Of a stretch of 64,000 nucleotides of DNA, positions 10,744 to 59,619 are shown in pieces. The stretch's first letter is position 1, and the number at the start of each line of letters is the position of its first letter. The stretch is from positions 186,001 to 250,000 of IMG/VR virus record IMGVR_UViG_3300042868_009074. One strand, 5' to 3'. A program made the position numbers and the translations under genes. The notes beneath the pieces were generated by a model that saw only the letters and a program-made list of their open reading frames with translations, ran no database searches and was not told the DNA's origin.

Positions 10744-11007
10744 CTATTTCTTGCCACGGTTACGGCCACGGTTTATAGCTGGTGACTCTGGGACCATTCT
10801 GCCGTCTTTAGTGTGTGACATGTCTTTGCCACCCTTGCCCATAATCCCACGGCTACGACGTTCAGCTGATAACTCACGACGCTTTGCTAATTGCTCAGGC
10901 TTTGTGTTGAATGCCTTATTATAAGCGTCCTTCTTAGCCTTAGCTGCTGGGTTCTTAGAGTAGAACTGTGAAGATGATCTTGGCTTAGAAGCCTTACGTG
11001 GTGCCAT
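10744..11007 (-). CDS. Small basic protein with HNH-like remnant
   Basis: GKDMSHTKDG...INRGRN; AAGGA RBS. Confidence 0.65.
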   Translation of the reverse strand: MAPRKASKPRSSSQFYSKNPAAKAKKDAYNKAFNTKPEQLAKRRELSAERRSRGIMGKGGKDMSHTKDGRMVPESPAINRGRNRGKK

Positions 11008-11009
11008 TA

Positions 11010-11276
11010 TTACATCCTTAATGAACTTATATCATAGTTCGGATAATTTGAAGCTATATCTCTTGCTGCTGATGTATGAGATGATCCACCTTCTCTCATC
11101 CATTCATATTGTTTCTGAGGGCTAGCTACACTAGTGAAATCACCAGTAACTGTAATACCCTTAGATCTGTTCCTGTAGCTTCTTACGCCTGCTGCTACAC
11201 CCAAAGCTCCCATACCTCCAAGAGCCATTTTACCACCTGCTGATTTAGGTATGAGGCCAAATCTTGCTGAGGACAT
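11010..11276 (-). CDS. Small hypothetical protein with hydrophobic segment
   Basis: AAGGA RBS; MALGGMGALGVAAGV. Confidence 0.65.
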   Translation of the reverse strand: MSSARFGLIPKSAGGKMALGGMGALGVAAGVRSYRNRSKGITVTGDFTSVASPQKQYEWMREGGSSHTSAARDIASNYPNYDISSLRM

Positions 11277-11345
11277 ATATCATTTCCTTGTCATTTTAGT
11301 GTACTATGTTAGTATAGTAAAACCATTTACGGAAAGATAGAACCT

Positions 11346-11639
11346 ATGAGCCTAAACTTTTGGGAACTAATCTATAAGTTCTTTAGTGAAGACCATGATG
11401 AAGGTAAAGATATCGTAGAATATCAGTTTGAGGGTATAGATGACAGTCAATGTGTCATCACTGCTCACAAAGAGGGTGAAAGTGTATTAGTTATTAATCT
11501 CATTGAAATGGATCAATGGGAAATGATTCAAGATATAGCTGATATCACAAACACCCAGATCTCAGATGTAGTTAAAGGATTATCTCCGCAAGAAATCGAT
11601 CAAATACGCCTGGATCTGGGTGAGATGGATTTAGATTAA
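11346..11639 (+). CDS. Acidic hypothetical protein
   Basis: 97 aa ORF, divergent from 11276. Confidence 0.65.
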   Translation: MSLNFWELIYKFFSEDHDEGKDIVEYQFEGIDDSQCVITAHKEGESVLVINLIEMDQWEMIQDIADITNTQISDVVKGLSPQEIDQIRLDLGEMDLD

Positions 11640-12269
11640 CGCCATCTTACCTTTTGTGTCATTAAGGTAAGTCTTTTGATGAATATCGTATAATACGACT
11701 CCATATGCTTCTTGAGCGTAACGTTGTGTGGTTAACGGTGAAATCAATGTTGGAATCAACTGATTCACATGTGCGCAAGCTAATGGTGAGTATTTTAGGC
11801 TCTTGCCGTAGAGATTGTAGATCTTAGTCTTTTTATATACAGACTTAACTGTATTGCCGTATACCTTTTCTTGATCTTCTCGCAAGTTATTGATGAAAAC
11901 CGCCCCATCAAATGTGAAGCCATAATTCACATAGAGATCGAATAACATCTCACAGTCTTGACCATGACCTATAAAGATCTTTTTATTATATCCAGACTCA
12001 AAGCTATTCTTTAAGGACGGATATATCTCATTAGTCTTTTCTATTGAAAGTTTATTATTATTGTATGGTATTAGAGCTATATCATGTTCATTAGCAAATA
12101 ACTTAGTAAAGCTATTGGTAAGGGACTTAGTGAATAGTCTTTCGGATCCTAGGATCAGGTTGTCTTGTGTCTTTAATAGCACTTTTATATCCTTTGATTT
12201 GTTTGGCATTTGATTAATAGTTTCTCTTGTATCAGTAGGATTCTGAGAATCCATAGTTATCTGTGTCAT
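11631..12269 (-). CDS. Hypothetical protein, possibly a degenerate alpha/beta-hydrolase fold
   Basis: IFIGHGQDC resembles a GHSxG elbow without the Ser. Confidence 0.6.
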   Translation of the reverse strand: MTQITMDSQNPTDTRETINQMPNKSKDIKVLLKTQDNLILGSERLFTKSLTNSFTKLFANEHDIALIPYNNNKLSIEKTNEIYPSLKNSFESGYNKKIFIGHGQDCEMLFDLYVNYGFTFDGAVFINNLREDQEKVYGNTVKSVYKKTKIYNLYGKSLKYSPLACAHVNQLIPTLISPLTTQRYAQEAYGVVLYDIHQKTYLNDTKGKMALI

Positions 12270-12450
12270 AGTCTAGGTATCTATCGTTATTTGAGTAACC
12301 ATAGTATACGGAAGCATATGTGTGGGCGTCTTCTATTGGTTCATCAGCATATACGAGACAGTCTGGACAACGTAGTGTTGTTTCAGCTGCGCCTTCATCT
12401 ATTATGAACTCTGATGAGCATTTTGTACAGGTGGTATATTCCATAGTCAT
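12232..12450 (-). CDS. Small zinc-ribbon protein
   Basis: CTKC...RCPDC; AAAGGA RBS. Confidence 0.65.
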   Translation of the reverse strand: MTMEYTTCTKCSSEFIIDEGAAETTLRCPDCLVYADEPIEDAHTYASVYYGYSNNDRYLDYDTDNYGFSESY

Positions 12451-12508
12451 TGGATTCTATCCTTTTGTTTTTTGGGGCGGATCATCGCCTTTGTGGTTAG
12501 TGAGTGAA

Positions 12509-12537
12509 ACATTATCGGTTGATTTGTGGTTTGTCAA
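12509..12537 (-). promoter_or_regulatory. Sigma70-type promoter for the leftward genes
   Basis: TTGACA-17 nt-TAATGT on the minus strand. Confidence 0.45.
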
Positions 12538-12766
12538 CCTAGGTGGGAATATTTGTAAGAAAAATTTTTTGGACTGTAATGATTGTATGTGAACCTATAT
12601 ATACATATATAAAAGTCATATAGGGGAAAAGTTGAGAAAATTTATAAAGGGGTAATAGTATATTATATGTATATGTTTATATCTTTAACATGCCCACCGG
12701 GTCTATGTAGGATATATATATGTTTTAAAGTTTATAATGTCACTATGAGTACTAGGAGGTACCGAC

Positions 12767-12961
12767 ATGTCCCTATTCACACCACTAACACAAGCCGAGT
12801 TCGAGGCTAAGTGCGCTGCAAAGCGTGCGAAAGGCGTATCAGCACGTCAGAAGAACAACGCACAAGTAACTGCAGTAACACAGCAGGTACGCATGCAAGT
12901 AGTACAACCAGCGTTGGGCTACATCACAGCTCGCGACAAGAGCGTCCCTACAACCATCTAG
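12767..12961 (+). CDS. Cassette protein, 64 aa, copy 1
   Basis: AGGAGG RBS; paralogue of 13403-13597 with mostly synonymous or conservative changes. Confidence 0.85.
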   Translation: MSLFTPLTQAEFEAKCAAKRAKGVSARQKNNAQVTAVTQQVRMQVVQPALGYITARDKSVPTTI

Positions 12962-13061
12962 TCTTCGGACTGCTCTGGTCCCTCACTTCCCCGTAAGGGG
13001 GGTGAGGGTTAAAGGAGTATATATCTTTAAATTATAGTATGCTCGTGAAAGGAGTATTATC

Positions 13062-13208
13062 ATGTTTACACTATTAACATCATTGTTCACTATCATCGGA
13101 TTCGCACTCACCAAGGGTGTATGGATCTTCGGTGCGTACACGCTCGTACGTAAGTACGACGTAGTGAACGTAATCAAGGCTCGCGTTCAGGACTCTTCGG
13201 AGTTCTGA
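13062..13208 (+). CDS. Cassette membrane peptide (48 aa)
   Basis: GAAAGGAG RBS; MFTLLTSLFTIIGFALTKGVWIFGAY... Confidence 0.7.
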   Translation: MFTLLTSLFTIIGFALTKGVWIFGAYTLVRKYDVVNVIKARVQDSSEF

Positions 13209-13402
13209 GCGTAAGCTAAGAAAAGGTATATATATTTAAATCTTATAGTGAGCAGCAATGCACACGTGTCGTTAGAGTTTGTATTTAGGAGGAACAATGT
13301 CAGCAACCGTTCAGGTCTAGAGTTGAGGTGTGTTGTTGTTTCAACAATGTTATATATCTTTAAATATTATAGTGTCTCTATTAGTACTTAGGAGGTACAG
13401 AC

Positions 13403-13597
13403 ATGTCATTATTCACACCACTATCACAGGCCGAGTTCGAGGCTGCGTGCGCTGCAAAGCGTGCGAAAGGCGTCCAAGCACGTCAGAAGAACAACGCTGC
13501 AGTCCAGGCTGTATCACAGCAGGTACGTATGCAGGTCATTGCTCCGGCAATGGGTTACATCACGACTCGTGACAAGAGCGTTCCAACAACCATCTAG
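13403..13597 (+). CDS. Cassette protein, 64 aa, copy 2
   Basis: AGGAGG RBS; paralogue of 12767-12961. Confidence 0.85.
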   Translation: MSLFTPLSQAEFEAACAAKRAKGVQARQKNNAAVQAVSQQVRMQVIAPAMGYITTRDKSVPTTI

Positions 13598-13717
13598 TCT
13601 TCGGACTACTCTGGTCCCTCACTTCCCCGTAAGGGGGGTGAGGGTTAAAGGAGTATATATCCTTTAAATCTTATAGTGACGCAAGGAAACCCAAGTACTT
13701 GTATCAGAAAGGTAAAC

Positions 13718-13969
13718 ATGTTTACATTAGCGCAAGTTGACGCACTCATCAACACGGCTATCAGCAAGGGCGATCTGCTCCACTACAACGGTGGTCAGGC
13801 TTACATCCGTTACGGTAACAACGTGATCATCATTGATCATGCTTGTCTTCCAGTAACAATGGAAGTCCACACCGGTGGATGGGCAGAGTCCTACATTGCA
13901 GAAAACCGTGGTGGTGGATACACTCACCACACGTCGCACTTGGCCGAGCTCCATCCGGAACTCGTCTAA
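13718..13969 (+). CDS. Cassette hypothetical protein
   Basis: GAAAGG RBS before MFTLAQVDALI; GCAA-tetraloop hairpin follows. Confidence 0.75.
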   Translation: MFTLAQVDALINTAISKGDLLHYNGGQAYIRYGNNVIIIDHACLPVTMEVHTGGWAESYIAENRGGGYTHHTSHLAELHPELV

Positions 13970-14057
13970 TCGCCAGCCTGTTCCCCCGCAAGGGGGACGG
14001 GCACCAAGGATTATAGTTCTTTAAATTATAGTATGAATTCCATGAAAGGGGATAAAC

Positions 14058-14162
14058 GTGAAGACTTTACGTTCTGCGTACTATGTTACGTACATCGTGT
14101 CAGCGATTCTTTCGTTCGTTGCTTTGGCTTTTGCCTACAAGCATCGCGACGAGATTCTCTGA
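14058..14162 (+). CDS. Cassette membrane peptide (34 aa)
   Basis: GAAAGGGG RBS, GTG start, one hydrophobic helix. Confidence 0.6.
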   Translation: MKTLRSAYYVTYIVSAILSFVALAFAYKHRDEIL

Positions 14163-14455
14163 CCAACCGCTCCGGCTGCCTCTCCCCCAGGCAAGTCGGG
14201 TAAGTCGGTTACTGTTATATATCTTTAGTTTATAGCCCACTATCACGGCTAGCCTATGTCCACATAGTGGGATAGGGTAGGCATAGTGATGTATATATGT
14301 ATGTATGTATTGTACATACCTTTAAATCATAGTATGAGCGATATGCAACTGGGTACCAGAGCTATCGTGGACTTGGTCTTTACTTCCCTTTTGGGAGGTA
14401 GAGACTACTGATTTATATATCTTTAAATTATAGTTTGCTCGTGAAAGGAGTTATT

Positions 14456-14617
14456 ATGTGGACATGTGGACACTGCACTAAGGAAATTGAAGACAAGTAT
14501 GATTACTGTGGATGGTGTGAATACTGTGGATGCACGTTGGATGATCATCGTTGCGTTTGCAAATGTGGTTCTACCGATGTGGAAGATCATGATTGCACTG
14601 GAGTTGGCTCAGCGTAA
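14456..14617 (+). CDS. Cassette Cys-rich peptide
   Basis: GAAAGGAG RBS; CGHC, CGWC, CGC, CVCKC. Confidence 0.7.
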   Translation: MWTCGHCTKEIEDKYDYCGWCEYCGCTLDDHRCVCKCGSTDVEDHDCTGVGSA

Positions 14618-14679
14618 GCTGGGTTAACTTCCCTGATTTATATACCTTTAAATTTCATAGAGAACTTAGGAGGTTCATT

Positions 14680-14850
14680 ATGGCTAAGAAAGCTATTATC
14701 TGTCGGCACTCTATCTGGTCGTTGATTAGCGACGATTCACGTCGTGCACTCATCACCCTCATCGAGGCTAACGTTGAGTTTGCTAATCGTCAGCTCAAGT
14801 TTGAGTTGGTTAATGGTCAGCTCAAGAAGGCCCCAGCGAAAGCTGGGTAA
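14680..14850 (+). CDS. Cassette hypothetical protein (56 aa)
   Basis: AGGAGG RBS; ends KKAPAKAG inside a hairpin. Confidence 0.75.
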   Translation: MAKKAIICRHSIWSLISDDSRRALITLIEANVEFANRQLKFELVNGQLKKAPAKAG

Positions 14851-14907
14851 CCTTCAACTATTTATATATCTTTAAATTATAGTATGTCCCTACAGAATGG
14901 AGATTAC

Positions 14908-15162
14908 ATGTATTACGTGTATCTACGACGTCGTATTGCGGTAGCAGTTGTACTGTTTATCGCCTTTATCCCAGTCATCAAGGTGCTCGTTCAAGAGCCA
15001 CCTGCCGATTGCGACCATGCATTGCATGTTGTTGCAAGAGGCGAGACTATTTGGTCAATCGCACATGCGCATTGCACCTCCGGTATCATCACCGCCATTG
15101 ATCAATTGGTAGATCAGTATGGTGGTGTTATCGATGTCGGTGACCGCATTCAGTTGCCTTGA
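14908..15162 (+). CDS. Membrane-anchored LysM-domain protein
   Basis: YLRRRIAVAVV TM segment, then HVVARGETIWSIA...IDVGDRIQLP. Confidence 0.8.
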   Translation: MYYVYLRRRIAVAVVLFIAFIPVIKVLVQEPPADCDHALHVVARGETIWSIAHAHCTSGIITAIDQLVDQYGGVIDVGDRIQLP

Positions 15163-15488
15163 CCAGGTCAAGTACACTCAGCCTTTTAGGTTGGGTGTAT
15201 TTGGCTATTGTATATATCTTTAAATCTTATAGTGGGAGAGATGGCACAGACAAGACTCATCCCGCTGCAGACGTGCAGTCCGGTTCGTCATGAACTGGGA
15301 TCTTGTTGGTAGTCACTGATCTTACCCGCTTAAGAGCGGTGCAGTGACTATTTACCTAATTGTTATATATCTTTAAATTATAGAGTGAGAAGCAATTGCA
15401 AACCGATGGGGCACTGGACTGCAGTGCATTGTTTCTTATTGTGTATATATCTTTAAATTTTATAGTGTGACTTGTGAAAGGAGTTATT

Positions 15489-15668
15489 ATGTCTAATGTA
15501 GACGAAGACGGACGTGGAGCATGTGTGAAATGTGGTCGTAATCAAGTATTGATTGATGAACTATGTGAAATGTGTGACAATGGGTTCACCCTAAAGGAAA
15601 TCAACATGTTTGAAACATGGTTGGCCGTTGGGGCACCCGGCGAGACCCCCTGGAGTAATCCAGGGTAA
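15489..15668 (+). CDS. Cassette zinc-finger peptide
   Basis: CVKC...CEMC; GAAAGGAG RBS. Confidence 0.7.
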   Translation: MSNVDEDGRGACVKCGRNQVLIDELCEMCDNGFTLKEINMFETWLAVGAPGETPWSNPG

Positions 15669-15764
15669 GTCCGTTGTATTTATACACCTTTAGTCCATAG
15701 TCCACTATCACGCGCAGGGTGATTATATATCTTTAAATACTTTAGTGAACTAAGGAGGTTCATT

Positions 15765-15920
15765 ATGTATTATGATTTTGACAAAGATGCTTGGTATTGT
15801 TCGACTTGTCACATCGATCTCAAGCAGATGGTTATTGACTATGACCCAGATTGTGGTGAATGCGAGTCTGCCATTTACACACTTCTGGTCAGTGGTGATC
15901 ACGACGTTTCGGCGTCGTGA
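15765..15920 (+). CDS. Cassette zinc-finger peptide (51 aa)
   Basis: AAGGAGG RBS; WYCSTC...DCGEC. Confidence 0.7.
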   Translation: MYYDFDKDAWYCSTCHIDLKQMVIDYDPDCGECESAIYTLLVSGDHDVSAS

Positions 15921-16111
15921 TTATCCACTTGTATATATCTTTTAAATTTTATAGTGAGTTGCCAACAAAACCAACCAGCGAAGTGGTTCTTCGGGTCTAG
16001 CACAGCACTAGGCGATAATGCAACTAAGATCTTCGGGAGTCATTCTCCCGAGGATCTATGCTGAAAGGTATATATCTTTAAATTATAGTTCGACTTTTGA
16101 AAGGAGTTATT

Positions 16112-16306
16112 ATGAGATTATTTATTATGCCAGATGGAAAAGGCGAAGGCGTCGATGCTGTGGTCTGTGAACGTTGTATTGAAAATGACTACGACATCAA
16201 CGAGAACAACGGTATGAGTGACCTTGAGCAGCAGCGCTACTTAAACGGGCTCGATGTTGCACCTGCTGCATCGTATTGTTGGTTGTGTGGAGTTGACTCG
16301 GCTTAG
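16112..16306 (+). CDS. Cassette zinc-finger peptide
   Basis: CERC...CWLC; GAAAGGAG RBS. Confidence 0.7.
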   Translation: MRLFIMPDGKGEGVDAVVCERCIENDYDINENNGMSDLEQQRYLNGLDVAPAASYCWLCGVDSA

Positions 16307-16372
16307 GCTGGGTTAACTCTCATGTCTTATATACCTTTAAATACTTATATGAACTCTTGAAAGGAGAACACA

Positions 16373-16606
16373 ATGAAGAATGCGATTTTATTCTTTCGTA
16401 ACATTGGCAATCCACACGGCATGGAATGGCGCAAGATTGGCTGTTTCAACATTTGGGCTTTTAGCGACTGGGCTGATTACGCAGGCTCTGGCTTGCATTG
16501 GAGCACCCATGACCGTTGCCTCGTGTTGAAAACATCCGCGAACAAGCGTAAATCTTGGAAGACCATTACACTTCTGCGTTTGCCCAAGGAAGGGACCTCA
16601 GCTTAG
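16373..16606 (+). CDS. Cassette hypothetical protein
   Basis: GAAAGGAG RBS; 77 aa. Confidence 0.7.
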   Translation: MKNAILFFRNIGNPHGMEWRKIGCFNIWAFSDWADYAGSGLHWSTHDRCLVLKTSANKRKSWKTITLLRLPKEGTSA

Positions 16607-16811
16607 GCTGAGGGACTTTTCCTTGTTTATATATCTTTAAATTTCATAGTGGTAGGCTGTACCGACGGCTATTCGATGGTCGGAGTAAATGGTGGGTCAA
16701 CACAGCGCAGGCTCCATCAGCTGGGTACCAGAAAGCTCAGAACGTTTATCGTTCTGGGTTTTTCTATTATTATATATCTTTAAATTTCATAGCGAACTAA
16801 GGAGGTTCAAC

Positions 16812-16970
16812 ATGTTTGTTACTAACTGTCCTCGTTGCGGGCAACTTGCGCCTGACTTTGAGAGTCCATCACATCAAGACGAATGGTGTTTTCATCATCG
16901 TTTGAATGGATTTGGCGAAGTCGTTGTTTCTGACGACGATTACCAGTCATCGGACGACGAGCCCTTTTAG
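16812..16970 (+). CDS. Cassette peptide with CPRC motif
   Basis: AAGGAGG RBS before MFVTNCPRCG. Confidence 0.7.
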   Translation: MFVTNCPRCGQLAPDFESPSHQDEWCFHHRLNGFGEVVVSDDDYQSSDDEPF

Positions 16971-17029
16971 GGTTCGTTGTTTGAGCTTTATATATCTTTA
17001 AATTTCATAGTGACCTAAGGAGGTTCATT

Positions 17030-17371
17030 ATGGCAACAACGCCATCCGTCACATCCCTACTATTACAACAGGAAGATTTGCAAACGCAAATTGATTCTGT
17101 TGACAGCAAGATTGCTGCGCTTCATCAGACCATGAAGGAGTGCGAGTCTCAAATCAACGCTTATGAGCAGGACCGTAAGCGTCTTGATTATTTGACTTGG
17201 GAGATTCAGAAGGCTTTGGCCAAGGCTGTCTGCCCTACTAACCAAGTTCTTCTTCGGTTCTCTAGTACTCTCAACGCTCTTCGGAATCCTGACCATCCGA
17301 GCTATGGAGCACTAGCGATTGACCAACGCTTTGCAGCCCTTGGCTTTACTCAGTCTTCTTCGGAAGGCTGA
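17030..17371 (+). CDS. Cassette coiled-coil protein
   Basis: AAGGAGG RBS; heptad pattern. Confidence 0.8.
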   Translation: MATTPSVTSLLLQQEDLQTQIDSVDSKIAALHQTMKECESQINAYEQDRKRLDYLTWEIQKALAKAVCPTNQVLLRFSSTLNALRNPDHPSYGALAIDQRFAALGFTQSSSEG

Positions 17372-17425
17372 GTTTAGCTGGATTATATATCTTTAAATTA
17401 TAGTGGGACGAAAGGAGTCATCATC

Positions 17426-17614
17426 ATGAATGACTGGGTAACACCAAAAATGGTGGACCAAGCTTTAGACTTTGCAGAACTACATCAACGTTCAAACAAG
17501 TTTTGTCGTGCAATGTTTCTGACCTTCAGGGCTAAGGGTAACTTGTCTGACAAGCAGGTTCTCAAGCTGTTGGAAATCAAAGCTGGTTACCGCCGCAGTG
17601 CTCGAGCTTCTTAG
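17426..17614 (+). CDS. Cassette hypothetical protein
   Basis: GAAAGGAG RBS; GNLSDKQV motif. Confidence 0.75.
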   Translation: MNDWVTPKMVDQALDFAELHQRSNKFCRAMFLTFRAKGNLSDKQVLKLLEIKAGYRRSARAS

Positions 17615-17867
17615 CTCGGGTTACTGTGGTCTTTATATATATCTTTAGCTTATAGTTGTCGTCCACTATCACGCGCCAGCTTGTATGCACATAGTGCTAT
17701 ACAGATGGTGTAGTGATTATACTGTGTGTATATCTTTAAATCTTATAGTGCCGACTGGAGTTGTAACAAGGACTGTCCGGGCACACAAGGATTGCATCTC
17801 TGACGAGAGATGTAGTCTTGTATCTATATAGATCTTTAAATGTCATAGTGTCCTTAGGAGGTACACT

Positions 17868-18020
17868 ATGTCCGCTATTTGCGCACGTTGTCGCTTGGAA
17901 AGCAACAACATCACACCACAGTCCATCGACCACATCCGTGGTCATTACGCAGCATTCCATGCTGCTTCGTCGAAGCCTCGCAAGGCTCGTGCGAAGAAGG
18001 CCCCAGCGAAAGCTGGGTGA
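17868..18020 (+). CDS. Cassette basic peptide (50 aa)
   Basis: AGGAGG RBS; MSAICARC...KKAPAKAG. Confidence 0.7.
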   Translation: MSAICARCRLESNNITPQSIDHIRGHYAAFHAASSKPRKARAKKAPAKAG

Positions 18021-18332
18021 CCTTCAACCGTTTATATGTCTTTAGTTTATATCTATAGTCTCACGTTTCAGGGATTGGAAACCAGTGAACTAAGTGAATA
18101 GTATGAGGAGTCCGCGAACGATTGTCCTACTGAACGCTGTAATAGTATCTTATATATGTTTATATATATGTTGGAGCAATGTCTTAGACTTGATCAGGCA
18201 TAGTTATTTTGCCGGCAAACAATTACGTCTATATTATTAATAGACATATATCTTAAGTTTTAATATTATATTATTCTAAATTTTCAAATAGGGACCCAAT
18301 CCGTGGGTTTCTTGTAGTAGTTTGGAGAAACT

Positions 18333-18758
18333 ATGAAAGTCCGTATCAACGCTCTTGCTTCTGGCAAGGGCTCAACTCAGCAAGCACCAATCCAAAAGCG
18401 TTCCGCTGATGGTCAACGCTTCGCTTTCTTGGTTAGCATTATGGATGCTACCAACACTGTACCAGTCGACCTTCGTTTCGACTCGGTTGCCTCTGATGGC
18501 GTCAAGTACCAGAACTTCTCTGGTGCGTATGAACTCTGGTTTTCAGCAGAAGAGAACTCTGAGATTGTTTCTCGGTTCAACACAGCAAAGGCTTCTGGCC
18601 AAGTTGTGTACTATGAGTTCACTTGCTTGACCGCTGACAAGTCTGTCCCCTATCTCTCTGAGAAGGGTGTCACTTATCAGACCATCATCCTGAATGCTGA
18701 CCGCTTTGCGGAACGCATTTGCGGTTTGGCACCAGTGCCCGCCATCAAGTTCGTTTGA
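18333..18758 (+). CDS. Hypothetical beta-rich protein
   Basis: GGAG RBS; 141 aa; hairpins downstream. Confidence 0.75.
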   Translation: MKVRINALASGKGSTQQAPIQKRSADGQRFAFLVSIMDATNTVPVDLRFDSVASDGVKYQNFSGAYELWFSAEENSEIVSRFNTAKASGQVVYYEFTCLTADKSVPYLSEKGVTYQTIILNADRFAERICGLAPVPAIKFV

Positions 18759-19452
18759 TGAGATTTGCCACCAAGTTCTCTTGGTGAAGACACCAGTCTG
18801 GTCACTTCGGTGACTAGGCTGTGTGTAACCCCCTCTATATATCCTTAGGTTTGATTTCACCTAGCACTGATCCGCTGAAACAATCCTTGTGTCCTACCTT
18901 GTGTAGTTGTGTACTGACGAGTACATTACTACATTAGGTAACACTCGTACCTACATAGATTCTAAATCTATAATCGATCTCAAGTTCTCTGGGGTTGGGC
19001 CCCCAGTTAGATGATTGCAGGTATCATATCGATATCTTTAGCCCGTTGTCCCGCTTTAAGGCATTTCCATTTGGATTTGCCGGCCAGGCAACAAAAGCAA
19101 ACATATGATAGTTTGGTAGATACCTACGGCTGATTGCCAAGAAACTACCCTTTTCGTTAGTATAAGTATACTTATCCCCTAATGTATCTATAGCAATATA
19201 TATATTATTGTTGGACAAATGCTTATATTAATATCTCTCAGGGGTATACCCATTATAAAACTATGCATATGTAACCTGCCAAGGTGTTATGCATTTGGGT
19301 ATACTAGACACGGCAAATGTAAGTATACCCAATATGGGAGATTATCTCCCCCTATATTAGGTGTCTCTATACTCTCTTATTCCTTTCTAGAGTATATGAT
19401 ATACCCCTGAGAATATTCGTGTTCGTTGGTTTTGCCGGCGAACCACAAGATT

Positions 19453-19734
19453 TCTTAAGAAGAGTCTGTATAGCGAGTCTGTAACTGATTAGACTAAAAC
19501 CCGATTGAGTTACCCTTAAGTTTCCAATTGAGAAGTGCCTAATCAAGTGCCACTTTAGCCGAGACTACAGAACTGTCTCTTTGAGACTATGGTTGATACG
19601 AAATCCCGTGATAACCTCTGCGAACGAATGCATTACCCTGGTTCAATTGTTGGATTGTACAATCCCAACCCAGCGTATGTTAGCCATCTAGTACCCATTG
19701 TTATCCTTGCAAAATAGGACCAATCTTCTTAAGA
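19453..19734. ncRNA. Candidate ~280-nt structured RNA
   Basis: 11-bp terminal stem TCTTAAGAAGA/TCTTCTTAAGA, nested stem ATGGTTGATACG/CGTATGTTAGCCAT, no ORF. Confidence 0.5.
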
Positions 19735-19982
19735 TTAAAGTTTCCAACTGCACACTGCTTATTGTGTGTGCGTGTAGAAATATCGCACGGTTAGCGATAA
19801 AAACCCCTCACTGGTATATTGAGGCTCTTCTAACCGAATATACCACTTATGGTTTGTTACTTACTTAATTTAAAAGTAACTCATGCTGAGTATCATGATG
19901 TAAAGTGCTTCCATTCTATAAGATATTTGCCTGCGGGCAATTGACCATACGCCCATACAAAACCAGAATAACAGGAGTTATT

Positions 19983-20207
19983 ATGAACACTACAAAAATT
20001 AAATCAACATTTAAGAAAACAGCTCAATATGGAGTTGTTGCGCCAGCCATTGGTGCAGGAACATTGCTTTATGGCACTGCTCTTGGTCTATGGCACATCA
20101 CTAAATCTACTGGTTTTGCCCTAAAAACCATTGCTAATGATTCAGTCACAAATACTGTTGAGTATATCAATGAAATCAAAAACCCACACGTTCGTAACGA
20201 TTGGTAA
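19983..20207 (+). CDS. Small membrane protein
   Basis: AGGAG RBS before MNTTKIK; hydrophobic segment. Confidence 0.65.
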   Translation: MNTTKIKSTFKKTAQYGVVAPAIGAGTLLYGTALGLWHITKSTGFALKTIANDSVTNTVEYINEIKNPHVRNDW

Positions 20208-29245: not shown

Positions 29246-29560
29246 ATGCAAAACACAAGAATCATTACCCTTAATCATAAGGATATCCCTATGCCTAAAA
29301 CTAACTACCTACCAGAAGAACTAGACTCTAAGTCTAAAATAAAAGAAATCATACTACAATACATTATCGATGCCAATGTAGAAGAGTATGAATACGACGA
29401 TGACGACGGCGACTGCTGTGACGATTGCTCGTATGAAGATGCTGACTGCAGCGACTGCTCATGTCATTCTGATTTTCCTGGCTACGATGAACATCTTGCT
29501 GCCCTACTAGTAAGATTCATCTATAATAACTTTAAACTTCAAGAAACACCTAATGAATAA
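29246..29560 (+). CDS. Acidic Cys-rich hypothetical protein
   Basis: DCCDDCSYEDADCSDCSCH. Confidence 0.6.
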   Translation: MQNTRIITLNHKDIPMPKTNYLPEELDSKSKIKEIILQYIIDANVEEYEYDDDDGDCCDDCSYEDADCSDCSCHSDFPGYDEHLAALLVRFIYNNFKLQETPNE

Positions 29561-30308
29561 TCAAATTAACTATGACCATGTTCACAATCAAGATCTAGCC
29601 CAATTAGATATTGAATCAGACACCCTTATGAGCGTAGATGTTGTGTCTATAATGTCACGCAAATTTAATTTTATTTCTCGTGGTTTTGATACTACAGAAA
29701 TGGAAAACCTTGTATCTTTCTATTATGACATAGAAGACACACGGATCTCGTTGCTAGATCTCAATGATTCTAAGAACTCATCTGTTTTTAAATCATATTC
29801 TCATTATCTAAGAGGATTAGAGAATTCTACTACTCCCATCTTTAGTGACTATAACCACTCCACTGTGACTGGTACCTGGGCTTTACAACAGCCTGGTATC
29901 GGACAAGCTGCCTCTGCTGCGTTGTTGTCTACGATAGATATTCACAAAGCTCCTAACTTTAATAACTTATGGAGCTATTGTGGTCTTAATCCAAGTACTG
30001 CTCAACCAGGATCTTGGAACCCATTCTTAAAGAATCTTACTTGGAAGATCGGCAAATCTTTTGCTACTGTTCCTGATTCCTTTTACGGTCAACTCTATAC
30101 TAAAGAGCTTGACCGTAGAATCAAACAACGAGATGATTCAGGTGCTGACACAGAAGACTCCAGGCTAGAAGCTCAAGCTCGACGCTATGCAACTAAGATC
30201 TTCTTGTCTCACTGGCATCAGATCCGATACATAGAAGTTATTGGACAAGAGCCATCATCTTCATTCAAAAATTCTAGTTACATTGCCCCACCTAATAATC
30301 CTTATTGA
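29553..30308 (+). CDS. IS110/Nop-domain-like protein without a nuclease domain (TasA-like)
   Basis: HhH PGIGQAASAALLSTID, LWSYCGLNP, WNPFLK, ARRYATKIFLSHW. No DEDD/RuvC N-terminus. Confidence 0.7.
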   Translation: MNNQINYDHVHNQDLAQLDIESDTLMSVDVVSIMSRKFNFISRGFDTTEMENLVSFYYDIEDTRISLLDLNDSKNSSVFKSYSHYLRGLENSTTPIFSDYNHSTVTGTWALQQPGIGQAASAALLSTIDIHKAPNFNNLWSYCGLNPSTAQPGSWNPFLKNLTWKIGKSFATVPDSFYGQLYTKELDRRIKQRDDSGADTEDSRLEAQARRYATKIFLSHWHQIRYIEVIGQEPSSSFKNSSYIAPPNNPY

Positions 30309-36731: not shown

Positions 36732-36815
36732 GCCCGAGTGGCGGAATAGGCAGACGCAGGGGGCTTAAACCCCCCGGAGGGCAACCTCTTACCGGTTCAA
36801 GTCCGGTCTCGGGTA
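36732..36815 (+). tRNA. tRNA-Leu(TAA)
   Basis: Acceptor GCCCGAG/CTCGGGT, anticodon loop CTTAAAC, long variable arm, GTTCAAGTC. Confidence 0.92.
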
Positions 36816-36844
36816 CTATGCAATACACTATAATAAGGAAAAAA

Positions 36845-39870: not shown

Positions 39871-39943
39871 GCGCCTTTAGCTCAGTTGGTAGAGCAGTGG
39901 ACTTTTAATCCATGTGTCCCGGGTTCGAACCCCGGAGGGCGCA
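39871..39943 (+). tRNA. tRNA-Lys(TTT)
   Basis: Acceptor GCGCCTT/AGGGCGC, anticodon loop CTTTTAA, GTTCGAAC. Confidence 0.95.
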
Positions 39944-40211
39944 CTATTAAAGATGTGTCTGTACTATATACAATACAAATCCAAAAGTTAGAGGGTAAAC
40001 ACAATGGAAGCAACTCCTAAACAACTAGCAACTAATCTCATAGATAAAGCTATTAAAGATATATCAGGTAGAGATCTTGTTTCCACCAATGAAATGACTG
40101 ATCTTCTTCTTGATATTAGGCTTTATCTTCTGGCTCAAGAAGAGCCAGTCCCCCAGTAGATCTAATCTATGCTATACTTAATAAATATTAGAAACAAATG
40201 AAAGATATATA

Positions 40212-40759: not shown

Positions 40760-40833
40760 GGGCCTTTAGCTCAGTTGGTTAGAGCAGGGTGCTCATAACG
40801 CCTTGGTCCTCGGTTCGAGTCCGGGAAGGCCCA
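40760..40833 (+). tRNA. tRNA with CAT anticodon (Ile2 or elongator Met)
   Basis: Acceptor GGGCCTT/AAGGCCC, loop CTCATAA, GTTCGAGTC. Confidence 0.92.
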
Positions 40834-40835
40834 CT

Positions 40836-59544: not shown

Positions 59545-59619
59545 GCCTCTATAGTTAAAGGGATATAACAAGGGACTTCTAATCCCTCGTTCTAGGTTCG
59601 AGTCCTAGTGGAGGCGCCA
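59545..59619 (+). tRNA. tRNA-Arg(TCT)
   Basis: Acceptor GCCTCTA/TGGAGGC+G, encoded CCA, loop CTTCTAA, GTTCGAGTC. Confidence 0.93.

What the first reader, a model, noticed from the sequence alone, without database searches (positions are those of the whole stretch)
13250..17825. ORF-less cassettes: candidate small RNAs in the same expression format
Seen: units at about 13250-13350, 14335-14410, 15234-15360, 15385-15440, 15956-16065, 16650-16765 and 17750-17820 have the motif and hairpins (for example AGATCTTCGGGAG-TCATT-CTCCCGAGGATCT and ACCGAC...GTCGG) but no convincing ORF. Inference: phage sRNAs (antisense, decoy or anti-defence RNAs), or decayed or empty cassettes.
Basis: partly seen in the sequence, partly recalled or inferred. 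Interest (0 to 1): 0.6.

Follow-up and report, generated by a model that had tools for sequence, protein, structure and literature searches.

The report
Small-RNA cassettes in a jumbo-phage gene array
In a lake jumbo phage, an array of tiny genes that each have their own promoter-like motif and terminator hairpin holds seven units with no protein-coding frame; most are conserved in related phages with changes that preserve RNA hairpins, so they are probably small structured RNAs of unknown target.

Summary
A promoter-like motif, TATATATCTTTAAAT(N0-3)TATAGTG, occurs about 24 times on the + strand at 12.6-18.2 kb. Seven motif-to-hairpin units have no Shine-Dalgarno-led ORF; the coding cassettes all have a stereotyped SD and ATG about 40 nt after the motif.

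The window is an uncultured lake-water jumbo phage (268 kb complete, one such array). No phage RNA polymerase or sigma factor was detected.

In more than 20 related arrays, six of the seven units recur as exchangeable cassettes:
- They are as conserved as the coding cassettes or more so. u3 is 78% identical against 51-62% for coding cassettes; u6 is 86% against 47-60%; u4 is identical in five arrays.
- Paired positions show compensatory changes. u3 has 33 pairs, 99% paired, 7 with changes on both sides. u2 has 6 covarying pairs in a 12-bp hairpin.
- None keeps an ORF: start codons are lost and indels are not multiples of three.

Two units are weaker. u1 carries an SD, an ATG and 7 codons, and looks derived from a coding cassette. 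u5 is an orphan.

There is no Rfam match, no antisense target in the phage genome and no exact copy in prokaryote genomes. No RNA run holds the stretch, so transcription is untested.

Verdict: probably new phage small-RNA families; function unknown.

The parts
12596..18332 (+). The cassette array. It holds about 24 units on the + strand, each made of a motif, a short body and a hairpin. About 17 encode 34-113 aa proteins of unknown function.
   Evidence: It is the only such cluster in the 268-kb genome.
13227..13350 (+). u1: motif 13227-13250, then about 100 nt with TAGGAGG, an ATG at 13298 and 7 codons. A closing helix joins the 5' end to the G/U-rich 3' end. There is no strong terminator.
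   Evidence: Fold z -0.4. Homologues in L217, L227 and L243 keep the closing helix but not the SD or ATG. The unit is absent from population variants that skip 12930/12972 to 13595/13609.
14313..14413 (+). u2: a weaker motif copy (TACATACCTTTAAATCATAGT), a 5' hairpin at 14338-14368 and a terminator hairpin at 14374-14407.
   Evidence: Fold z -5.3. Five distinct close homologues and three distant ones were found. In the 12-pair 5' hairpin every cell is paired and 6 pairs covary. The ATG at the transcript start is followed at once by TGA in L214 and L215.
15211..15363 (+). u3: a perfect motif and four helices: about 15234-15263, 15264-15279, 15281-15297, and a long terminator-like helix at 15308-15352.
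   Evidence: Five distinct homologues (L252, L217, L225, L132 and the window). Of 33 pairs, 99.2% of cells are paired and 7 pairs changed on both sides. 0 of 500 shuffles reached the covariation score. In L225 and L132 the ATG is AAG, and there are 1-nt and 6-nt indels.
15364..15443 (+). u4: a perfect motif and a hairpin RNA of about 57 nt (15384-15440). The 5' arm AGAAGCAAU pairs with the U-rich 3' arm. An inner hairpin lies at 15411-15427.
   Evidence: Fold z -3.3. The body is 100% identical in five other arrays. A second subtype with another inner hairpin but the same arms occurs in L213 and L250.
15932..16068 (+). u5: motif with a 1-nt insertion and a body of about 111 nt with a perfect-but-one 13-bp hairpin at 16027-16057. 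No U-tract follows directly.
   Evidence: Fold z -3.8. No homologue in any related array or in IMG/VR. A 36-codon frame from the GTG at 15954 without an SD cannot be excluded.
16628..16770 (+). u6: a perfect motif, a hairpin at 16661-16683, and a canonical intrinsic terminator at 16731-16763 followed by TTTTT.
   Evidence: Fold z -3.4. The body is 97-100% identical in L214, L215 and L243. It is about 86-90% identical in L133, where coding cassettes are only 47-60% identical. The 2-nt and 1-nt indels shift every frame.
17727..17830 (+). u7: motif, a 5' hairpin at 17748-17784 and a terminator-like hairpin at 17785-17821.
   Evidence: Fold z -3.8. Homologues in L243, L252 and L213 show one full compensatory change and several one-sided changes in the 3' hairpin. 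L213 and L214 hold a subfamily with another 5' part. The unit is absent from L212 at the same place.
14216..14312 (+). u2a: a variant motif (TATATATCTTTAG..) followed by the CCACTATCACG element. It lies just upstream of u2's motif.
   Evidence: Two sister copies lie at 15680-15723 and 17636-17726.
17636..17726 (+). u7a: the same variant element, just upstream of u7's motif.
   Evidence: 82-99% identical in 9 of 14 arrays.

Best explanation
Most of the ORF-less cassettes (u2, u3, u4, u6, u7; less surely u1 and u5) are genes for small, structured, non-coding RNAs of about 55-130 nt.

Each would be transcribed from its own copy of the array's promoter-like motif. Each would end at its own hairpin, in the same format as the neighbouring mini-protein genes.

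The array looks like a hypervariable host-takeover module, probably expressed early. It is probably read by the host RNA polymerase, because the complete phage genome shows no T7-type polymerase, no Rpb2-type subunit and no sigma-70 region 2.

The RNA cassettes are exchanged between phages as whole modules, most likely by recombination at the repeated motifs. Selection on their RNA folds maintains them.

What is shown: the anatomy, the lack of a conserved ORF, the conservation, the covariation and the modular mobility.

What is inferred: that they are transcribed, where the transcripts start, that expression is early, and that they act in trans. The likeliest targets are host mRNAs or host RNA-binding proteins, since no phage target was found.
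For: - Motif and hairpins are real and non-random.
- Coding cassettes have a stereotyped SD and ATG; u2 to u7 lack them.
- Six of the seven units have homologues in other arrays, always with their own motif and hairpin but in different neighbourhoods.
- They are at least as conserved as coding cassettes. Between the window and L132, u3 is 78% identical against 51-62% for coding cassettes. Between the window and L133, u6 is 86% against 47-60%. u4 is 100% identical in five arrays.
- u3 covaries: 33 pairs, 99.2% of cells paired, 7 pairs changed on both sides, 0 of 500 shuffles reach the covariation score, and slid controls collapse.
- u2 covaries: in the 12-pair 5' hairpin all cells pair in 5 distinct sequences, and 6 pairs covary, for example CTGG/CCAG, CTAC/GTAG and CTGT/ACAG.
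- u1 and u4 keep a helix that closes the 5' end on the 3' end.
- Frames are not kept. The ATG becomes AAG in u3. In u2 relatives the ATG is followed at once by TGA. Indels of 1 and 2 nt occur in u2, u3 and u6.
- Truly decayed cassettes in relatives look different: they keep the parental leader, SD and ATG, then stop after 3 codons.
Against: - There are no RNA data of any kind. All 24 runs that hold the stretch are lake-water DNA metagenomes, so transcription, ends and abundance are untested.
- The motif is not a canonical sigma-70 promoter. The conserved part sits where the spacer would be, there is no -35, and the generic promoter scan is not enriched. Its promoter role is therefore inferred.
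- Each family has only 3-5 distinct sequences. Much of the covariation lies in terminator-like hairpins, which selection for termination alone would also keep.
- Part of the high identity could come from recent lateral exchange rather than constraint.
- u2's first bases match the 5' leader of a coding cassette in L213, so an origin by loss of an ORF is likely for some units.
- No target or known family was found.
- u5 is an orphan, and u1 does not fold better than shuffles.
Confidence: 0.6

Rival explanations
1. The units are decayed or empty cassettes. Deletion of the ORF from a protein cassette left a promoter, part of a leader and a terminator. These remnants are neutral and persist only because the array turns over fast.
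For: - u1 keeps a good SD and an ATG followed by 7 codons, does not fold better than shuffles, and is missing from population variants.
- u2 begins with the same bases (ATGAGCGA) as the leader of a coding cassette in L213, and L227 has that leader joined directly to the u2 terminator.
- Clear decay products exist in relatives (L213:4346, L222:3865).
- u7's terminator is shared with a differently built unit.
- u5 has no relatives.
Against: - Neutral remnants should diverge faster than coding cassettes. Instead u3, u4 and u6 are the best-conserved segments of the arrays.
- Compensatory changes outside terminators (the u2 5' hairpin; helices 1 and 3 of u3) indicate selection on an RNA fold.
- The same units recur in 3-5 arrays in different neighbourhoods.
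Confidence: 0.17
2. The units are cis-acting transcription elements rather than RNA genes. They could be spare promoters and terminators that insulate neighbouring cassettes, soak up RNA polymerase, or act as leaders or attenuators for the next cassette. In this reading the hairpins are selected only for termination or RNA stability.
For: - Much of the conserved structure is terminator-like.
- In u1 and u4 the 5' end pairs with the U-rich 3' end, as in extended terminators.
- The half-motif TATATATCTTT can occur without the TATAG part, directly after a terminator. Part of the motif may therefore belong to termination.
Against: - Every unit is followed by a complete motif for the next cassette, so no leader role is needed.
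- Insulation does not explain conserved, covarying 5' hairpins and conserved unpaired stretches: GCAAC..AGAGC in u2, the invariant helix 2 of u3, and AATYGCA..CGATGGGG in u4.
- Coding cassettes adjoin one another without such spacers.
Confidence: 0.13
3. The units encode micropeptides, translated from leaderless or weakly led starts. Candidates are u1 (7 aa), u3 (23 aa), u2 (25 aa from the ATG at the start), u5 (36 aa from a GTG) and u7 (27 aa from a GTG).
For: - Open frames exist.
- u7's frame stays open in its L213 homologue, and a short HKD[CY]I stretch is shared with the subfamily in L213 and L214 (reading).
- u1 has a strong SD.
Against: - Starts are lost or followed at once by a stop in homologues of u1, u2 and u3.
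- Indels of 1-2 nt change the frame in u2, u3 and u6.
- There is no SD, whereas every accepted gene of the array has a strong one.
- GUG is a poor leaderless start (established knowledge).
- The putative peptides run through terminator hairpins.
Confidence: 0.06

Closest known systems
Stand-alone phage small RNAs with their own promoter and intrinsic terminator (lambda OOP, P22 Sar, T4 RNAs C and D, recently described lytic-phage sRNAs; recalled from general knowledge, plus the review cited as bib5 in PMC10914365 and bioRxiv 10.1101/2024.10.31.621285)
   Same: Short (about 60-130 nt) structured RNAs encoded by a phage, each bounded by a promoter and a hairpin terminator, with no ORF.
   Different: There is no sequence or Rfam relation. 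Here there are at least seven units in one genome, and at least ten families across relatives. They are interleaved with protein cassettes in one uniform format and are not antisense to any phage gene. Expression is unproven.
Non-coding RNAs found by transcript mapping in Pseudomonas phages, including phiKZ (PMC10914365, PMC8244752)
   Same: Jumbo and other lytic phages carry many candidate ncRNAs in regions dense in promoters and terminators.
   Different: Most of those candidates derive from 5' or 3' UTRs by processing or premature termination (PMC10914365, read). The units here are separate modules with their own motif. phiKZ uses its own RNA polymerases, and none was detected here.
Host-takeover or early mini-gene clusters with repeated strong promoters and terminators (SPO1 host-takeover module, T4 early and T5 pre-early regions; recalled from general knowledge)
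   Same: A cluster of very small genes of unknown function on one strand, each with a strong SD, with many repeated promoters and terminators and high variability between relatives.
   Different: Those clusters are described as protein-coding. Here about a quarter to a third of the cassettes are ORF-less and conserved. The motif also does not have a sigma-70 layout.
ORF-less cassettes of integron arrays (recalled from general knowledge)
   Same: An array of exchangeable cassettes bounded by a repeated element, with a minority lacking an ORF.
   Different: There is no attC or attI architecture, and no integrase was seen next to the array. Each cassette has its own promoter-like motif. Exchange is most simply explained by homologous recombination at the repeated motifs (deletion joints).

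Membership tests
Any described RNA family (Rfam 15) | A covariance-model match at or near the family's gathering score | tested here: not met
   searched 11000-20000 on both strands at E up to 1. The only match was LPR10 at 25.7 bits against a gathering score of 69 (E 0.31). It lies at 14829-14914, across a terminator and promoter junction and not in any unit.
Bacterial or phage trans-acting small RNA gene | Its own promoter upstream and an intrinsic terminator downstream | tested here: inconclusive
   The array motif precedes every unit. Terminator-like hairpins follow u2, u3, u4 and u6, but u1 and u5 lack a U-tract right after the stem. Promoter activity of the motif is inferred only.
Bacterial or phage trans-acting small RNA gene | No conserved protein-coding frame | tested here: met
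   Start codons are lost or followed by an immediate stop, and indels of 1-2 nt occur in homologues of u1, u2, u3 and u6. No SD is present in u2 to u7. u5 could not be tested because it is an orphan.
Bacterial or phage trans-acting small RNA gene | Secondary structure conserved through compensatory changes | tested here: met
   Met for u3 and u2. Weaker for u1, u4 and u7. Too little variation in u6. u5 not testable.
Bacterial or phage trans-acting small RNA gene | A discrete transcript is detected | not testable with these tools
   No RNA run holds the stretch. The runs that were laid are DNA contigs.
Antisense RNA against a phage gene | Extended complementarity to a phage mRNA | tested here: not met
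   The best complementary matches in the 267,766-bp genome are 11-16 nt at E of 0.05 or more. Duplex energies against 324 start regions do not exceed those of shuffled RNAs.
Mimic of a host RNA (decoy) | Sequence shared with a host genome | tested here: inconclusive
   Exact conserved cores of u6 (22 nt) and u3 (22 nt with 2 degenerate positions) have no match in the contigs of 185,579 prokaryote species. Only exact matches of two units were tested, and the host is unknown.
Decayed protein cassette | Remnant of the parental leader, SD and start with a truncated frame | tested here: inconclusive
   Met for u1 and for L213:4346 and L222:3865 in relatives. Not met for u3 to u7. u2 shares only its first 8 bases with a coding leader.

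The most novel reading that the evidence does not exclude
Lake jumbo phages of this clade keep a shared, fast-shuffling pool of at least ten families of small-RNA cassettes. They sit beside mini-protein cassettes in one promoter-bounded array. This would be an RNA arm of host takeover or counter-defence, in which individual RNAs neutralise particular host factors or defence systems and are swapped between phages like accessory genes.
Probability: 0.3. Interest if true: 0.75.

Novelty: new variant of a known kind. Interest (0 to 1): 0.55.

Why it matters
Small RNAs encoded by lytic phages are still few, and most were found one at a time. Here a single uniform expression format marks out a whole set of candidate RNA genes in an uncultured jumbo-phage clade, with comparative evidence of selection on their folds.

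If the RNAs are real, the motif gives a simple rule for harvesting many phage small-RNA families from metagenomes. It would also show that hypervariable early or host-takeover arrays trade RNA genes as well as protein genes. The cassettes are short and self-contained, so they are easy to test in a surrogate host.

Tried and rejected
- Rfam at permissive threshold found nothing relevant.
- Megablast of the array against GenBank phages found no match. The RecA-like protein has no cultured-phage relative above 56% identity, so host and clade stay unknown.
- A 15-nt motif scan of IMG/VR gave only chance single hits and was uninformative.
- Exact-core scans for u6, u3 and u5 in IMG/VR returned only contigs already known.
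- The metagenome scan with the 141-aa flanking protein gave one locus, L212.
- Covariance models of u3, u2 and u6 searched over 91 loci (1.5 Mb). They found no further u3 or u6 homologues, and only weak extra u2-like hits that share the terminator.
- The sequencing-run search found no RNA holder. Laying four DNA runs showed almost no variation inside the units, so it added no covariation data.
- Antisense and duplex target searches in the phage genome stayed at chance level. A first version of the duplex script timed out.
- Host-mimic scans of prokaryote genomes found no match.
- Searches of the complete genome for a T7-type RNA polymerase, an Rpb2-type subunit and sigma-70 region 2 were all negative. 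Very divergent polymerases cannot be excluded.
- A leaderless-peptide reading for u2 and u7 was considered and rejected for u2, where frames differ between homologues. It is unresolved for u7.


Full report
**What the window is.** The window is part of an IMG/VR virus record (104 kb, about half complete). It is 100% identical over the array to a complete 267,766-bp record from another sample. All 24 sequencing runs that hold the stretch are lake-water DNA metagenomes. The genome has a RecA-like recombinase, a Lon-like protease, helicases and four tRNA genes. It has no close cultured relative: the best phage RecA match is 56% identical. No T7-type RNA polymerase, Rpb2-type subunit or sigma-70 region 2 was detected in the complete genome.

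**The array.** Between about 12.6 and 18.3 kb the + strand carries a repeated motif, TATATATCTTTAAAT, followed after 0-3 bases by (T/C)ATAGTG.
- The pattern search gave 22 matches against 1.26 expected. Twenty of them lie in the array and on the + strand.
- It is the only such cluster in the 268-kb genome.
- Each motif opens a short unit that ends in a hairpin. Terminator-like sites number 12 against 4.3 expected, all on the + strand.
- About 17 units encode proteins of 34-113 aa. Only weak sub-threshold Pfam hits were seen (LysM, DUF7577).
- All coding units have a stereotyped leader with a strong SD and an ATG about 40 nt after the motif.
- The motif does not have a sigma-70 layout. Its conserved part lies where the spacer would be, and there is no -35. 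Its role as a promoter, the start site and early timing are therefore inferred, not shown.

**The finding.** Units u2 to u7 have no SD-led start. Unit u1 has TAGGAGG-N4-ATG but only seven codons. Six of the seven fold much better than shuffled sequence (z from -2.7 to -5.3). Unit u1 does not.

**Relatives.** Related arrays came from three sources:
- loci next to the RecA-like gene in IMG/VR;
- one metagenome locus;
- contigs that encode homologues of the LysM-like cassette protein and of the 141-aa protein flanking the array.

All related arrays use the same motif or a variant of it. All are mosaics of cassettes, and all contain ORF-less cassettes, from one to about eleven per array by a crude count. 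Clustering the ORF-less cassettes gives at least ten recurrent families. Many contigs of relatives end inside the array, as expected for a repeat-rich region.

**Evidence by unit.**
- **u3** has five distinct versions (window, L252, L217, L225, L132). The consensus has four helices with 33 pairs. Of all cells, 99.2% are paired, and seven pairs changed on both sides. None of 500 shuffles reaches the covariation score, and sliding the partners destroys pairing. The only ATG is AAG in two versions, and there are 1-nt and 6-nt indels.
- **u2** has five close versions and three distant ones that share its terminator. In its 12-pair 5' hairpin every cell pairs and six pairs covary. That alignment was fitted by the model, which favours the structure, but the pairs are plain in the raw sequences. 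The ATG at its start is followed at once by TGA in L214 and L215.
- **u4** is identical in five other arrays. A second subtype has a different inner hairpin but the same arms and the same conserved single-stranded stretch.
- **u6** is 97-100% identical in three arrays and about 86-90% identical in L133. Its 2-nt and 1-nt indels break every frame. It varies too little to test its fold.
- **u7** recurs in L243, L252 and L213 with consistent changes in its 3' hairpin. It belongs to a wider family whose members differ in the 5' part.
- **u1** recurs in L217, L227 and L243. The 17-pair helix that closes the 5' end on the 3' end is kept through one-sided changes and one two-sided change. The SD and ATG are not kept.
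- **u5** has no homologue anywhere.

**Rate of change.** Between the window and L132 (RecA-like protein 90% identical), shared coding cassettes are 51-62% identical in DNA, while u3 is 78% identical. Between the window and L133, coding cassettes are 47-60% identical and u6 is 86%. Across 14 arrays the ORF-less units are present as patchily as coding cassettes, in 0-5 arrays each, and they are at least as similar where present. So they behave as accessory genes, not as fast-decaying junk. Recent lateral exchange could explain part of the high identity.

**Decay does happen.** L213:4346 and L222:3865 keep the long leader, SD and ATG of the 83-aa gene (window 13718) and then stop after three codons. 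Unit u1 resembles that state. Unit u2 shares its first eight bases with the leader of a coding cassette in L213, and L227 has that leader joined directly to the u2 terminator. Some RNA cassettes probably arose from protein cassettes by loss of the ORF. The later compensatory evolution of the u2 hairpin argues that the product came under selection of its own.

**Function.** Nothing known matches:
- no Rfam family;
- no complementarity to any part of the phage genome beyond chance;
- no duplex with 324 phage start regions better than shuffled controls;
- no exact copy of the u6 or u3 cores in 185,579 prokaryote species.

The most likely mode is action in trans on host RNAs or host RNA-binding proteins, but this is inference. 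No RNA data exist for this phage.

**Population data.** Laying contigs of four lake metagenomes on 12600-18300 (5,701 letters) showed the units almost invariant. Variants were seen that skip 12930/12972 to 13595/13609. That removes one of two paralogous 64-aa genes, the 48-aa cassette and u1. Two further joints lie near cassette boundaries (at 14002 to 15438 and 13160 to 16765), but each has only about 27-28 letters on its shorter side, so they are weak evidence. The pattern fits recombination between repeated parts of the array as the means of cassette gain and loss.

**Comparison with the known.** Phage small RNAs with their own promoter and terminator are a known kind. Transcript maps of Pseudomonas phages list many candidate ncRNAs, mostly UTR-derived (PMC10914365; PMC8244752). 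Clusters of mini-genes with repeated promoters and terminators are also known, for example the SPO1 host-takeover module and the T4 early region (from general knowledge). What is unusual here is the combination. A quarter to a third of the cassettes of one uniform array are RNA cassettes. They fall into many families with no known relatives, and they are exchanged between phages like the protein cassettes. I rate it a new variant of a known kind, of moderate interest. The main weakness is the complete lack of expression data.

Noticed in passing
window 14216-14312, 15680-15723, 17636-17726: A second class of ORF-less element. A variant motif (TATATATCTTTAG.., often without the TATAGTG part) is followed by CCACTATCACGCG.. 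and, further on..GTAGTGATTATA, always just upstream of a normal motif. The short copy at 15696-15720 looks like a 17-20-bp dyad (TATCAC-N7-GTGAT). The long copies carry an inner hairpin that seems to covary between arrays. It is 82-99% identical in 9 of 14 arrays, often with 2-3 copies per array. It could be an operator-like site or another RNA.
   Followed up: partly
window 18033-18332: The 278-nt ORF-less stretch that closes the array starts with a variant motif. It is 92-97% identical in 9 arrays. The 141-aa gene right after it is only 58-90% identical at the protein level in the same relatives. It is the best-conserved non-coding piece of the region.
   Followed up: partly
window 12767-12961 and 13403-13597: Two paralogous 64-aa genes (about 86% identical over 329 nt) bracket the 48-aa cassette and u1. 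Lake populations hold variants that skip 636-664 nt between them.
   Followed up: partly
window 16018-16034 and 30187-30203: A 17-nt exact match on the same strand (ATGCAACTAAGATCTTC) links u5 and the inside of the 251-aa ORF at 29553-30308. It has E about 1e-3 in the 268-kb genome. It is not antisense, and its meaning is unknown.
   Followed up: no
L213:4346-4464 and L222:3865-3991: Decayed cassettes in relatives. They keep the long leader, SD and ATG of the 83-aa gene (window 13718-13969), followed by three codons, a stop and a terminator.
   Followed up: partly
L132:14970-15110, 17000-17090, 17090-17200; L133:16690-16800: More distant relatives use a changed motif (TTTTATAAAnGTTTTATAGA in L132). 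They have their own ORF-less cassettes. One family is shared by L132 and L133 but absent from the window.
   Followed up: no
window 13018-17870 (leaders of coding cassettes): The coding cassettes use two near-identical leader types..TAGTGAACTAAGGAGGTTCATTATG and ..TAGTTTGCTCGTGAAAGGAGTTATTATG. The repeat shared between cassettes therefore reaches about 45 nt, long enough for homologous recombination.
   Followed up: no
window 12000-18000 against the rest: The array is richer in G+C (42-44%) than most of the window (31-41%) and has positive GC skew.
   Followed up: no
window 36732-36816, 39871-39944, 40760-40834, 59545-59619: Four tRNA genes: Leu-TAA, Lys-TTT, Met-CAT and Arg-TCT.
   Followed up: no
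L134-L209 (contig ends): Many contigs of related phages end 3-6 kb downstream of the RecA-like gene, which is inside the array. This is probably assembly breakage at the repeated motif.
   Followed up: no
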